From positions 36,518,001 to 36,582,000 of the forward strand of contig NC_043015.1 of NCBI RefSeq assembly GCF_006345805.1: DNA of 64,000 bases, given 5' to 3'. This stretch comes from Octopus sinensis. Its lineage: Eukaryota. Shown piece after piece: positions 51,190-53,575 of this stretch (the first letter of the stretch is position 1; each line of letters starts with the position of its first letter). The notes beneath the pieces are model-generated. The model searched no databases and was not told the DNA's origin. It was given only the letters and a program-made list of their open reading frames with translations. Position numbers and translations under genes: made by a program.

Positions 51190-51225
<36 letters not shown>

Positions 51226-51495
51226 TTAATTAATAAGGGTGAGAGAATTAGATACTAATTTAATAGTATATTTATTCAACACCAAGTGGCCTAGTGCTAC
51301 GAGAAACCTGGATTATTATAATATTTTATAACATATAATATTTTTACAAAATAAATATAAGAGAGTGGTCACTATATTGCTCACTCTAGCACCAGTTAAT
51401 CCAAAAGGTTTCAACCACGAAAATACATGTTTCCCATGAAAGTCAGTACGACTGTTAGCTCACACGGACAGGGCAAGTAAAAAATAACAAAAATA

Positions 51496-51589
51496 CAGAT
51501 TATTTTGGGACAATTGTTTCGCTATTAATGAATTAAATGTAATATTACTTACAAAAAATCCATTTGTAGCTCGTCACCAAGACTATCTG
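51496..51589 (-). ncRNA. Hammerhead copy 1 (core C3 missing)
   Basis: Reads cttgg-TGACGA instead of cttgg-CTGACGA; either a real mutation or a read error. Confidence 0.6.
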
Positions 51590-52025
51590 GATGAAATCCA
51601 CTCAATCACACGCAGATTTTACCATAACGATAAATACGCGTGTGGTTCAATTGATTACATCGACGTTATAATTCAAATGCCCCAACCAACAGCGCGCCAA
51701 ACTTTCACGGAAAACAAATACAGCATTTAGAAATAAATGCAGCCAATTATAATTAATTAATAAGGGTGAGAGAATTAGATACTAATTTAATAGTATATTT
51801 ATTCAACACCAAGTGGCCTAGTGCTACGAGAAACCTGGATTATTATAATATTTTATAACATATTATAATATTTTTACAAAATAAATATTAGAGAGTGGTC
51901 ACTATATTGCTCACTCTAGCACCAGTTAATCCAAAAGGTTTCAACCACGAAAATACATGTTTCCCATGAAAGTCAGTACGACTGTTAGCTCACACGGACA
52001 GGGCAAGTAAAAAATAACAAAAATA

Positions 52026-52119
52026 CAGATTATTTTGGGACAATTGTTTCGCTATTAATGAATAAATGTAATATTACTTACAAAAAATCCATTTGTAGCT
52101 CGTCAGCCAAGACTATCTG
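52026..52119 (-). ncRNA. Type I hammerhead ribozyme, copy 2
   Basis: cagatagtcttgg-CTGACGA-gcta...tagc-GAAAC-AATT-GTC-ccaaaataatctg. Confidence 0.88.
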
Positions 52120-52554
52120 GATTAAATCCACTCAATCACCGCCAGATTTTAACCATACGATAAATACGCGTGTGGTTCAATTGATTACATCGTCGACGTA
52201 TAATTCAAATGCCCCAACCAACAGCGCGCCAAACTTTCACGGAAAACAAATACACATTTAGAAATAAATGCAGCATAATTATAATTAATTAATAAGGGTG
52301 AGAGAATTAGATACTAATTTAATAGTATATTTATTCAACACCAAGTGGCCTAGTGCTACGAGAAACCTGGATTATTATAATATTTTTAACATATTATAAT
52401 ATTTTTACAAAATAAATATAAGAGAGTGGTCACTATATTGCTCACTCTAGCACCAGTTAATCCAAAAGGTTTCAACCACGAAAATACATGTTTCCCATGA
52501 AAGTCAGTACGACTGTTAGCTCACACGGACAGGGCAGTAAAAATAACAAAAATA

Positions 52555-52649
52555 CAGATTATTTTGGGACAATTGTTTCGCTATTAATGAATTAAATGTA
52601 ATATTACTTACAAAAAATCCATTTGTAGCTCGTCAGCCAAGACTATCTG
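52555..52649 (-). ncRNA. Type I hammerhead ribozyme, copy 3
   Basis: Same intact core and stems as copy 2. Confidence 0.88.
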
Positions 52650-53304
52650 GATTAAATCCACTCAATCACACGCCAGATTTTACCATAACGATAAATACGC
52701 GTGGGTTCAATTGATTACATCCGACGTTATAATTCAAATGCCCCAACCAACAGCGCGCCAAACTTTCACGGAAAACAAATACAGCATTTAGAAATAAATG
52801 CAGCATATTATAATTAATTAATAAGGTGAGAGAATTAGATCTAATTTAATAGTATATTTTTCAACACCAAGTGGCCTAGTGCTACGAGAAACCTGGATTA
52901 TTATAATATTTTATAACATATTATATATTTTTACAAAATAAATATAAGAGAGTGGTCACTATATTGCTCACTCTAGCACCATTTAATCCAAAAGGTTTCA
53001 ACCACGAAAATAGTTTCCCATGAAAGTCAGTACGACTGTTAGCTCACACGGACAGGGCAAGTAAAAAATAACAAAAATACAGATTAAATTAGTATCTATT
53101 AAATTAGTATCTAATTCTCTCACCCTTATTAATTAATTATAATTATGCTGCATTTATTTCTAAATGCTGTATTTGTTTTCCGTGAAAGTTTGGCGCGCTG
53201 TTGGTTGGGGCATTTGAATTATAACGTCGGATGTAATCAATTGAACCACACGCGTATTTATCGTTATGGTAAAATCTGGCGTGTGATTGAGTGGATTTCT
53301 CATC

Positions 53305-53399
53305 CAGATAGTCTTGGCTGACGAGCTACAAATGGATTTTTTGTAAGTAATATTACATTTAATTCATTAATAGCGAAACAATTGTCCCAAAATAATCTG
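53305..53399 (+). ncRNA. Type I hammerhead ribozyme in the inverted unit
   Basis: Stem I 53305-53317 pairs with 53387-53399 (11 of 13, one GU); CTGACGA 53318-53324; stem II gcta/tagc; GAAA 53375-53378; GTC cleavage triplet 53384-53386. Confidence 0.9.
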
Positions 53400-53538
53400 T
53401 ATTTTTGTTATTTTTTACTTGCCCTGTCCGTGTGAGCTAACAGTCGTACTGACTTTCATGGGAAACATGTATTTCGTGGTTGAAACCTTTTGGATTAACT
53501 GGTGCTAGAGTGAGCAATATAGTGACCACTCTCTTATT

Positions 53539-53575
<37 letters not shown>

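What the first reader, a model, noticed from the sequence alone, without database searches (positions are those of the whole stretch)
51223..53545. Tandem ~530-bp hammerhead-ribozyme array: candidate cephalopod retrozyme / circular-RNA replicon
Seen: each complete unit has a full type I hammerhead. Stem I is cagatagtcttgg/ccaaaataatctg. The core is CTGACGA...GAAA. Stem II gcta/tagc extends through aatggatt/aattcatt. Helix III is a tiny palindrome (ACAATTGT) ending in a GUC site. Sites recur every 529-530 nt, the unit has no recognisable protein, and the array sits in (TA)n. Established: minimal type I hammerheads with a palindromic helix III occur in Penelope-like elements and in animal tandem non-LTR retrozymes. 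These can cleave as dimers and give circular monomer RNAs. Inference: a minus-strand multimer self-cleaves into ~530-nt monomers that circularise and are reinserted by a PLE reverse transcriptase acting in trans. PLE remnants lie in the same window. I know of no description of this unit but could not search.
Basis: partly seen in the sequence, partly recalled or inferred. Interest (0 to 1): 0.93.

Follow-up and report, generated by a model that had tools for sequence, protein, structure and literature searches.

The report
Hammerhead-ribozyme repeat element, Penelope-type insertion
This is a real, non-coding ~534-bp repeat carrying a self-cleaving hammerhead ribozyme, inserted into a (TA)n microsatellite as two head-to-head arms; it is a new (probably octopod) member of the known "non-LTR retrozyme"/Penelope-derived class, not a new kind of element.

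Summary
The ribozyme motif is real. Four copies of a 94-95-nt type I hammerhead lie at the stated coordinates. The core (CUGACGA...GAAA), the G10.1-C11.1 pair, the palindromic helix III (ACAAUUGU) and the GUC site are all present. Rfam Hammerhead_1 matches end to end, but only at 27.5 bits (cut-off 34) and only when the ~100-nt motif is searched alone, because helix II carries a ~50-nt extension.

The locus is not a plain tandem array. One arm of 3.4 units runs on the minus strand (53086->51224). A 5'-truncated inverted copy runs on the plus strand (53096->53545). They meet head to head, and both outer ends abut (TA)n.

An older, diverged relative at 31506-32541 has the same two-arm layout, a 3' terminus at the homologous unit position, and compensatory changes in stems I and II.

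The unit is non-coding, AT-rich and strongly self-paired. Two Penelope-like (PLE) RT/GIY-YIG remnants lie in the window.

This fits the published non-LTR retrozyme class, with the known PLE insertion signature.

Cleavage, circular RNA and trans-mobilisation were not tested. "Replicon" is unsupported.

Differences between copies are mostly 1-nt deletions, which look like assembly error.

Verdict: new member of a known kind, moderate interest.

The parts
51146..51223 (.). Left flanking (TA)n microsatellite (presumed target). It abuts the 3' end of arm A.
   Evidence: TRF; sequence; junction
51224..53086 (-). Arm A: 3.4 tandem units in ribozyme sense on the minus strand. It comprises a 5'-truncated unit (53086-52568, starting at unit position 7), two full units (52567-52039 and 52038-51509), and a 3' partial (51508-51224) ending at unit position ~290.
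52555..52649 (-). Hammerhead copy 1 of arm A, intact (95 nt, identical to the + strand copy). Cleavage predicted between 52568 and 52567.
52026..52119 (-). Hammerhead copy 2 of arm A. Core intact; 1-nt deletion in the distal helix II extension. Cleavage predicted between 52039 and 52038.
51496..51589 (-). Hammerhead copy 3 of arm A. C3 of CUGANGA is missing as assembled, so the copy would be inactive if the deletion is real; it may be an assembly error. GUC site at 51509.
53081..53113 (.). Head-to-head junction of the two arms. There is a 4-nt microhomology (ATTA) and a 15-nt direct duplication, ATTAAATTAGTATCT x2. The junction is asymmetric (unit position 7 meets unit position ~246), so it is not a fold-back palindrome.
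53096..53545 (+). Arm B: inverted, 5'-truncated copy in ribozyme sense on the plus strand. It covers unit positions ~246-534 and then 1-~160, and ends in (TA)n.
53305..53399 (+). Hammerhead of arm B, intact. Cleavage predicted after C53386. Rfam Hammerhead_1 scores 27.5 bits and matches model positions 1-45.
53544..53572 (.). Right flanking (TA)14
31506..31914 (-). Related older element (family 2), arm A. Its 3' end abuts (TA)n (31467-31505) at unit position 281 of 518. Its decayed hammerhead lies at 31845-31768 (core CAGACGA).
31919..32541 (+). Family 2, arm B: 1.2 units. The hammerhead is at 32387-32468, with cleavage predicted after 32455 (GUU). Rfam Hammerhead_1 scores 20.8 bits, E 0.0044.
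46966..48345 (-). Decayed, 5'-truncated Penelope-like element. It retains the RT YLDD motif, thumb/HTH_animal region, CxxC linker and GIY-YIG, and ends in (TA)n.
21862..22861 (+). Second Penelope-like RT remnant
   Evidence: tblastn with the PLE proteins found

Best explanation
The locus is one young insertion of a ~534-bp non-coding, hammerhead-bearing retroelement. It belongs to the class called non-LTR retrozymes, that is, non-autonomous derivatives of Penelope-like elements.

Inferred life cycle, taken from the family literature and not shown here:
- A multimeric transcript of the ribozyme-sense strand folds so that two neighbouring hammerheads pair their palindromic helix III (ACAAUUGU) into an 8-bp helix.
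- Each then cleaves after GUC, releasing ~534-nt monomers with 5'-OH and 2',3'-cyclic phosphate ends.
- A host tRNA ligase (RtcB) may circularise these monomers.
- The RNA, multimeric or circular, is reverse-transcribed and integrated by the RT/GIY-YIG protein of an autonomous PLE acting in trans.

Shown here: the insertion has the PLE footprint. The target is a (TA)n microsatellite and the copies are tandem. A second arm is inverted and 5'-truncated, and it meets the first arm head to head through a microhomology junction. I interpret this as twin priming or template switching during target-primed reverse transcription.

The arm that carries the element's proper 3' end stops ~290 nt downstream of the cleavage site, in an AT-rich stretch that can anneal to (TA)n. 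A diverged sister family in the same window ends at the homologous position. This suggests a defined 3' terminus or a defined priming site.
For: Ribozyme:
- All invariant hammerhead nucleotides are present, and Hammerhead_1 matches end to end.
- The descriptor gives 4 hits against 0.063 expected.
- Between family 1 and family 2 the core is unchanged, while the four core-proximal pairs of stem I (UUGG/CCAA -> CACA/UGUG) and two pairs of helix II (GCUA/UAGC -> GUUG/CAAC) change on both sides.
- The single-motif hammerhead fold (-19.7 kcal/mol) loses to an inactive alternative fold (-25.3). The double hammerhead (-50.6) is 11 kcal/mol better than two single hammerhead folds (-39.4). Dimer-dependent cleavage of such motifs is published (PMC4209133, PMC7229834).

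Element:
- Cleavage sites are spaced 529-530 nt apart and the consensus unit is 534 nt.
- The unit has no protein domain or homologue and is 32% GC.
- The circular monomer folds at -148 kcal/mol against -106 +/- 6 for shuffles (z = -7.0). The sense strand is 35 kcal/mol more stable than the antisense.

Insertion footprint:
- (TA)n lies on both sides, and the arms meet head to head at an asymmetric microhomology junction.
- The same layout occurs at the independent, older family-2 locus, where copies are 82-92% identical and differ mainly by substitutions.
- Arm-A termini fall at unit position ~290 (family 1) and 281 (family 2), both just after the conserved block TCAC[C/T]CTTATTA.
- Partial tandems, inverted 5'-truncated copies and (TA)n bias are described for PLEs in PMC8557442.

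PLE presence: two RT/GIY-YIG remnants lie in the window.

Class precedent: PMC7229834; bioRxiv 10.64898/2026.07.22.740005, which reports retrozyme consensus lengths of 51-972 bp and homology to PLE pLTRs.
Against: - There is no transcript, cleavage or circle evidence of any kind.
- No other copy of the unit could be found. The collections available are not eukaryotic genomes.
- No autonomous PLE with a homologous pLTR or hammerhead was identified. The PLE remnant at 47 kb has no recognisable hammerhead in its 3' UTR, and PLE loci fetched from elsewhere carry unrelated hammerheads or none.
- The Rfam score is below the curated threshold.
- One of the four ribozymes has a core deletion as assembled.
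- Arm B ends at an internal unit position (~160). It is therefore not a simple 5'-truncated copy with the canonical 3' end.
- The shared-terminus argument rests on two loci, and the boundaries lie in AT-rich sequence that is ambiguous by a few nt.
Confidence: 0.74

Rival explanations
1. The repeats are not an independent non-autonomous element. They are extremely 5'-truncated pieces (pseudo-LTR / 3' UTR) of an autonomous Penelope-like element, deposited as a by-product of its own insertions.
For: Hammerheads of PLEs sit in the pLTR near the 3' end, and PLE insertions are heavily 5'-truncated, tandem and inverted (PMC8557442, PMC4209133). The footprint here is the same.
Against: Three successive cleavage sites are ~530 nt apart with no ORF remnant between them. 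A partial tandem of a 3-4 kb PLE would repeat at PLE length. A diverged sister family keeps nearly the same unit length (518 against 534 nt) and is collinear with it, which points to a lineage maintained at this size. No similarity to the PLE proteins was found inside the unit (one search lists only the two RT remnants).
Confidence: 0.12
2. The arrangement (number of copies, the inverted arm, or both) is an assembly artefact of a long-read assembly in a repeat. The true locus could be a single unit or a different array.
For: Differences between copies are about 24 indel events (22 of them deletions) against about 4-5 substitutions. This pattern is typical of unpolished long-read consensus in repeats. 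The window comes from a scaffolded assembly with a 100-N gap at 41233-41332.
Against: The junction is asymmetric (unit position 7 against ~246) with a microhomology and a 15-nt duplication, unlike a fold-back chimera. Both outer ends run into (TA)n and then unique sequence. An independent, older locus whose copies differ by substitutions has the same two-arm layout. The layout is the expected one for PLE-type insertions (PMC8557442).
Confidence: 0.07
3. It is a small satellite DNA amplified and inverted by DNA-level events (unequal exchange, replication slippage, inversion). The hammerhead is an inert relic and no RNA intermediate is involved.
For: [quoted passage not shown] Nothing here shows transcription.
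Against: There are only 3.4 + 0.85 copies. The same two-arm layout and homologous terminus next to (TA)n recur at two unlinked loci of diverged families. The ribozyme stems covary between the families while the core is invariant, which indicates selection on the RNA. Predicted folding is stronger for the sense strand.
Confidence: 0.05
4. It is a viroid-like or HDV-like autonomous circular RNA replicon whose DNA copy was captured in the genome.
For: The monomer is strongly self-paired and carries a hammerhead.
Against: Only one polarity has a ribozyme, and no other ribozyme family was detected. The unit has no ORF. Two diverged genomic families with retrotransposon-type insertion footprints exist. 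The ribozyme has the PLE-type minimal helix III.
Confidence: 0.02

Closest known systems
Metazoan non-LTR retrozymes (Cervera & de la Pena 2020, PMC7229834; Li, Clavereau & Pollet 2026, bioRxiv 10.64898/2026.07.22.740005)
   Same: A type I hammerhead in each unit of a short, non-coding, AT-rich tandem repeat. The monomer is strongly self-paired. Autonomous PLEs co-occur. Helix III is weak and palindromic, implying action as a dimer, as in the axolotl and newt motifs.
   Different: The unit (534 nt) is longer than the 170-400 nt of the 2020 paper, although it lies within the 51-972 bp range of the 2026 survey. Helix II carries a ~50-nt extension that pushes the motif below the Rfam threshold. 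The host is a cephalopod, for which I found no retrozyme description. The insertion shows an inverted arm and a (TA)n target, features not discussed in either retrozyme paper. Expression and circularity are untested here.
Hammerheads in the pseudo-LTRs of Penelope-like elements (Cervera & de la Pena 2014, PMC4209133; Craig et al. 2021, PMC8557442)
   Same: A minimal type I hammerhead with a small palindromic helix III. Partial tandem copies, an adjacent inverted 5'-truncated copy, and insertion into (TA)n. Pairs of motifs on opposite strands 100-700 bp apart were noted in 2014.
   Different: There is no RT/GIY-YIG ORF between the repeats. The unit repeats at 534 bp, not at the 3-4 kb length of a PLE. 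[quoted passage not shown] Stem I is longer (13 positions, 11 paired).
Newt/salamander satellite 2 hammerhead repeats
   Same: A ~330-bp tandem unit, a type I hammerhead with a 1-2 bp helix III and a palindromic loop, and efficient cleavage only as a double hammerhead.
   Different: The host phylum, unit length and helix II size differ. Copy number here is unknown. Those repeats form very large arrays, whereas this is a 4-copy insertion.
Plant LTR retrozymes (PMC4918200)
   Same: A non-autonomous retroelement whose hammerheads release a monomer that circularises.
   Different: The plant elements have type III hammerheads in LTRs, PBS/PPT motifs, 4-bp TSDs, >55% GC and Gypsy machinery. None of these features is present here.

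Membership tests
Hammerhead ribozyme, type I (Rfam RF00163) | Conserved core C3-U4-G5-A6-N7-G8-A9 and G12-A13-A14, A15.1-U16.1 pair, cleavage site N-U-H | tested here: met
   CUGACGA, GAAA, A-U closing pair and GUC are present in three of the four family-1 copies. The fourth lacks C3 as assembled. Family 2 has GUU.
Hammerhead ribozyme, type I (Rfam RF00163) | Three helices around the core with G10.1-C11.1, and helix I open (type I topology) | tested here: met
   Stem I has 11 of 13 positions paired. Helix II is 4 bp plus an extension. Helix III is 2 bp as a hairpin or 8 bp as a dimer. Stems I and II covary between families.
Hammerhead ribozyme, type I (Rfam RF00163) | Score at or above Rfam's gathering threshold (34 bits) | tested here: not met
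   27.5 bits (family 1) and 20.8 bits (family 2). The full model 1-45 is matched, and the loss comes from the long helix II insertion.
Hammerhead ribozyme, type I (Rfam RF00163) | Mg2+-dependent self-cleavage | not testable with these tools
   Requires in vitro transcription of monomer and dimer.
Non-LTR retrozyme | Type I hammerhead in every unit of a short, non-coding tandem repeat of low GC | tested here: met
   Period 529-530 nt (534 nt consensus), 32% GC, no Pfam domain or homologue. One caveat: one copy has a core deletion as assembled.
Non-LTR retrozyme | Highly self-paired monomer RNA | tested here: met
   Circular MFE -148.3 kcal/mol against shuffles at -105.7 +/- 6.1, z = -7.0, 65% of bases paired. 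This is prediction only.
Non-LTR retrozyme | Expressed as linear and circular monomer RNA | not testable with these tools
   No transcriptome was accessible. Protein-level look-ups of unit ORFs found nothing.
Non-LTR retrozyme | Co-occurrence with autonomous PLEs, and sequence relation to a PLE pLTR | tested here: inconclusive
   PLE remnants are present in the window. No PLE with a pLTR homologous to the unit was found.
Autonomous Penelope-like element | ORF encoding RT plus GIY-YIG endonuclease | tested here: not met
   There is no such ORF or remnant inside the unit.
Autonomous Penelope-like element | Insertion footprint: partial tandem, adjacent inverted 5'-truncated copy, microsatellite (TA)n target | tested here: met
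   and again at the family-2 locus. The criteria are from PMC8557442.
Viroid-like / HDV-like circular RNA replicon | Ribozymes in both polarities or an RNA-dependent replication signature | tested here: not met
   Only the sense strand has a hammerhead, and no other ribozyme family appears at E<=10.
Plant LTR retrozyme | Type III hammerheads in LTRs, PBS and PPT, 4-bp TSD | tested here: not met
   The topology is type I, there are no LTRs, and the flanks are (TA)n.

The most novel reading that the evidence does not exclude
The two loci may capture how retrozymes integrate. Each has one arm ending at the same unit position, ~285 nt past the cleavage site, annealed into (TA)n, and an opposed second arm. 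This would mean that animal retrozymes are inserted by PLE-type target-primed reverse transcription from a defined 3' end or priming site, with twin priming, and not by random rolling-circle cDNA synthesis on a circle. The near-identical copies of family 1 would then mark a lineage that is still active in a cephalopod genome. Its long-helix-II hammerhead is missed by standard Rfam annotation.
Probability: 0.3. Interest if true: 0.55.

Novelty: new member of a known kind. Interest (0 to 1): 0.36.

Why it matters
- It adds cephalopods to the hosts of hammerhead-bearing non-autonomous retroelements. The only prior trace I found for cephalopods is a bare count of 235 Hammerhead_1 hits in the giant squid genome (PMC6962438).
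- It shows that a family with an extended helix II falls below Rfam's threshold. Ribozyme counts in such genomes are therefore likely underestimates.
- The young insertion is cleanly bounded and shows the full PLE footprint. This is independent structural support for the proposal that retrozymes ride on PLE machinery.
- It gives a concrete substrate (monomer, dimer, junctions) for testing dimer-dependent cleavage and circularisation.
- None of this changes the current picture of these elements.

Tried and rejected
- Rfam at gathering threshold on the whole window and at E<=10 on 2.8 kb found no ribozyme. The only hits were miRNA-model matches to (CA)n/(TG)n repeats, which are low-complexity artefacts.
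- I looked for other copies of the unit. An exact look-up and a homology search with a 58-aa unit ORF found nothing.
- A degenerate-pattern scan of JGI metagenome contigs gave one hit (L005). It lies in bacterial/phage-like coding sequence and is a chance match.
- I looked for the autonomous partner. The 3' UTR of the PLE remnant at 47 kb has no recognisable hammerhead.
- PLE loci fetched from an Argonauta hians chromosome, from marine metagenome scaffolds and from two ENA assemblies share no sequence with the unit. One (L007) has an unrelated classical PLE min-hammerhead, and one (L002) has a degenerate hammerhead-like motif.
- A covariance model for the two families was not built. MAFFT misaligned helix III and stem I, and hand-made alignments cannot be supplied. 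I used a relaxed descriptor instead, and it found only the two family-2 copies.
- tRNA/SINE origin: ARAGORN found nothing.
- A first shuffle test timed out and was replaced by first-order Markov simulations.
- The 5' end of arm A lies 7 nt from the cleavage site, which might suggest a ribozyme-processed template. Family 2 does not repeat this, so I treat it as possibly coincidental.
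Full report
**What is at 51223-53545**

Reading the sequence and the repeat analysis show a ~530-bp unit present four times, but not as one head-to-tail array. 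All copies were oriented on the ribozyme-sense strand and aligned.

- Arm A lies on the minus strand, from 53086 down to 51224.
  - It starts with a 5'-truncated unit (53086-52568, beginning at unit position 7).
  - Two complete units follow (52567-52039 and 52038-51509).
  - It ends with a 3' partial (51508-51224) that stops at unit position ~290.
- Arm B lies on the plus strand, from 53096 to ~53545. It covers unit positions ~246-534 and then 1-~160.
- The 5' ends of the two arms meet head to head at 53081-53096. Their 3' ends point outward, into (TA)n at 51146-51223 and 53544-53572.
- The junction has a 4-nt microhomology (ATTA) and a 15-nt direct duplication (ATTAAATTAGTATCT x2). It joins unit position 7 to unit position ~246, so it is asymmetric. 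That is not what a fold-back sequencing chimera would give.
- The unit occurs nowhere else in the window.

**The ribozyme**

An identical 95-nt motif lies at 53305-53399 (+) and 52649-52555 (-). The copy at 52119-52026 (-) has a 1-nt deletion in the distal helix II. The copy at 51589-51496 (-) lacks C3 of the core.

The motif is a type I hammerhead with these parts:

- Stem I is CAGAUAGUCUUGG/CCAAAAUAAUCUG, with 11 of 13 positions paired.
- The core is CUGACGA.
- Helix II is GCUA/UAGC, starting with the required G10.1-C11.1 pair. It continues through an internal loop into AAUGGAUU/AAUUCAUU and a GUAAG/UUAC hairpin.
- GAAA follows.
- Helix III is ACAAUUGU.
- C17 follows, with cleavage predicted after 53386, 52568, 52039 and 51509.

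Rfam results:

- Rfam reports nothing at gathering threshold or in a 2.8-kb permissive scan.
- Given only 116 nt, Hammerhead_1 (RF00163) matches model positions 1-45 at 27.5 bits (cut-off 34, E 2.9e-5). The deficit comes from the ~50-nt helix II insertion.

A simple hammerhead descriptor finds 4 hits in the window, against 0.063 expected in 300 first-order Markov simulations, none with more than 1 hit.

**Monomer or dimer**

- Alone, the motif prefers an inactive fold (-25.3 kcal/mol) over the hammerhead fold (-19.7).
- Two copies can pair their palindromic helix III into 8 bp with stems I exchanged. This is the classical double hammerhead. It scores -50.6 kcal/mol, against -39.4 for two single hammerhead folds.
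- This agrees with published behaviour of PLE, newt and axolotl motifs, which cleave poorly as monomers and better as dimers (PMC4209133, PMC7229834). It is a prediction, not a measurement.

**A second, older family in the same window**

The descriptor also hit 32387-32468 (+) (Hammerhead_1 20.8 bits, E 0.0044). The locus around it, 31506-32541, again has two head-to-head arms:

- A minus-sense arm runs 31914->31506. Its 3' end abuts (TA)n at 31467-31505. It carries a decayed hammerhead (core CAGACGA) at 31845-31768.
- A plus-sense arm of 1.2 units runs 31919->32541.

The copies are 82-92% identical and differ mainly by substitutions, so this insertion is old.

The 518-nt unit is collinear with the 534-nt family-1 consensus (53% identity; global score z = 7.2 against shuffles). 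Shared blocks lie after the cleavage site, around TCAC[C/T]CTTATTA, at GGCGCGC, and in the ribozyme.

Between the families:

- The catalytic core is unchanged.
- The four core-proximal pairs of stem I change on both sides (UUGG/CCAA -> CACA/UGUG).
- Two helix II pairs change on both sides (C-G -> U-A and A-U -> G-C).
- G10.1-C11.1 is retained.

This is covariation of the kind expected for a functional ribozyme. Only two lineages were compared.

**Nature of the unit**

- The longest stop-free stretches of the consensus are 81 aa or shorter and have no Pfam domain.
- A 58-aa ORF has no homologue among 5.8 billion proteins and is not on record.
- ARAGORN finds no tRNA-like part.
- GC content is 32%.
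- As a circle, the sense monomer is predicted to fold at -148.3 kcal/mol, against -105.7 +/- 6.1 for dinucleotide shuffles (z = -7.0). The antisense folds at -113.3 (z = -6.3). Family 2 gives z = -5.0 and -4.1.
- The 35 kcal/mol advantage of the sense strand suggests G-U-dependent, strand-specific RNA structure.

**Quality of the assembly here**

- Against the majority consensus, the family-1 copies differ by about 24 indel events (22 deletions) and only 4-5 true substitutions.
- The old family-2 copies differ mostly by substitutions.
- Deletion-dominated noise confined to a young repeat is what unpolished long-read consensus looks like.
- The window is from a scaffolded assembly (100 N at 41233-41332).
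- I therefore regard the copies as essentially identical in reality. The missing C3 in one ribozyme is unreliable either way. This is inference; reads would settle it.

**Context and host**

- A decayed, 5'-truncated Penelope-like element lies on the minus strand at 46966-48345. It has the RT YLDD motif, thumb, CxxC linker and GIY-YIG (Pfam GIY-YIG E 0.006, below threshold), and it ends in (TA)n.
- Its homologues carry HTH_animal, RVT_1 and GIY-YIG domains. The best named one is from Argonauta hians, at 46% identity.
- tblastn with those proteins reveals a second PLE remnant at 21862-22861 (+).
- A ~190-bp repeat at 39152-39348 and 63234-63353 matches the A. hians contig at 76-78% identity.
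- Together with 30-38% GC and dense microsatellites, this fits an octopod cephalopod but does not prove it.

**Interpretation**

The features match the published non-LTR retrozyme class. That class is defined as short, non-coding, AT-rich tandem units, each with a type I hammerhead, strongly self-paired, and co-occurring with PLEs (PMC7229834). A 2026 survey reports consensus lengths of 51-972 bp and homology to PLE pseudo-LTRs (bioRxiv 10.64898/2026.07.22.740005).

The insertion footprint is the one described for PLEs. It consists of partial tandems, an adjacent inverted 5'-truncated copy, and a bias for (TA)n (PMC8557442). Pairs of motifs on opposite strands 100-700 bp apart were already noted in 2014 (PMC4209133).

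In both loci, the arm that abuts (TA)n ends at the homologous unit position, ~290 in family 1 and 281 in family 2. In both cases that is 16-24 nt after the conserved TCAC[C/T]CTTATTA block. The other arm ends at a variable internal position.

I read this as target-primed reverse transcription from a defined AT-rich 3' end or priming site into a nicked (TA)n. A second priming or template switch would then produce the opposed arm, analogous to twin priming. The enzymology is inferred, and n = 2.

**What is not supported**

- Nothing here shows transcription, cleavage, circles or trans-mobilisation.
- 'Replicon' in the viroid sense is not supported. Only one polarity carries a ribozyme, and no other ribozyme family is detected.
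- No autonomous PLE with a homologous terminus was found. The databases reachable here are poor in cephalopod DNA.

**Novelty**

- Full-text searches found no paper on hammerhead or retrozyme elements in cephalopods.
- The exception is a count of 235 Hammerhead_1 loci in the giant squid genome (PMC6962438).
- A detailed Octopus vulgaris repeat annotation mentions neither hammerheads nor retrozymes (PMC13282606).

So the sequence family is probably undescribed, but the kind of element is well known.

Points of modest interest:

- the extended helix II that evades Rfam;
- the 534-nt unit, at the long end for invertebrate retrozymes;
- the clean PLE-type footprint on a non-coding array.

**Verdict**

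The ribozyme observation is confirmed. The array description and the mechanism are partly supported. This is a new member of a known kind, of moderate interest.

Noticed in passing
window 31506-32541: A second, older hammerhead-bearing element (518-nt unit), related to the one in the finding. It has the same head-to-head two-arm layout, and one arm ends in (TA)n. Hammerheads lie at 32387-32468 (+, core intact, GUU site) and 31845-31768 (-, core CAGACGA).
   Followed up: yes
window 46966-48345 (-) and 21862-22861 (+): Two decayed Penelope-like element fragments. The first retains the YLDD motif, thumb, CxxC linker and GIY-YIG and ends in (TA)n. No hammerhead is recognisable in its 3' UTR (47070-46965).
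   Followed up: partly
window 51224-53545: Differences between the four copies are about 22 single- or few-base deletions against 4-5 substitutions. This suggests residual long-read consensus errors in this repeat rather than divergence.
   Followed up: partly
window 41233-41332: A run of exactly 100 N, which is a scaffold gap. The window comes from a scaffolded assembly.
   Followed up: no
window 39152-39348 and 63234-63353: A ~190-bp dispersed repeat (SINE-like?) shared at 76-78% identity with an Argonauta hians chromosome-scale contig (L001 4175-4365). It supports an octopod origin of the window.
   Followed up: no
window 28063-28407 (+): A 114-aa ORF that looks like the C-terminal tail of a non-LTR (LINE) reverse transcriptase ORF. 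It was not checked against any library.
   Followed up: no
window 51000-51160: Rfam miRNA models (mir-3149, mir-297, mir-568 and others) match the (CA)n/(TG)n/(TA)n microsatellite on both strands, below gathering score. These are low-complexity artefacts, not miRNA genes.
   Followed up: yes
L007 9672-9643 (-): A classical PLE minimal hammerhead in an ENA contig that carries a PLE RT homologue. Stem I is GCCU/AGGC, the core is CUGAAGA plus an extra A, helix II is GCC/GGC, and helix III is the palindrome AGCGCGCU. It is unrelated in sequence to the window's families.
   Followed up: partly
L002 ~1640-1690 (+), 3' of the PLE ORF: A degenerate hammerhead-like motif (UUAAUCU...GAAACCGGUU|AGAUUAA) with a mutated core, ~230 nt downstream of a PLE ORF on a marine metagenome scaffold. 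Its helix III resembles that of family 2.
   Followed up: no
window 26088-26933 and 6376-6911: Long 'ORFs' on both strands made of low-complexity repeats (SLSLS.../EREREM..., poly-V/poly-L). They are products of simple-sequence DNA, not genes.
   Followed up: no
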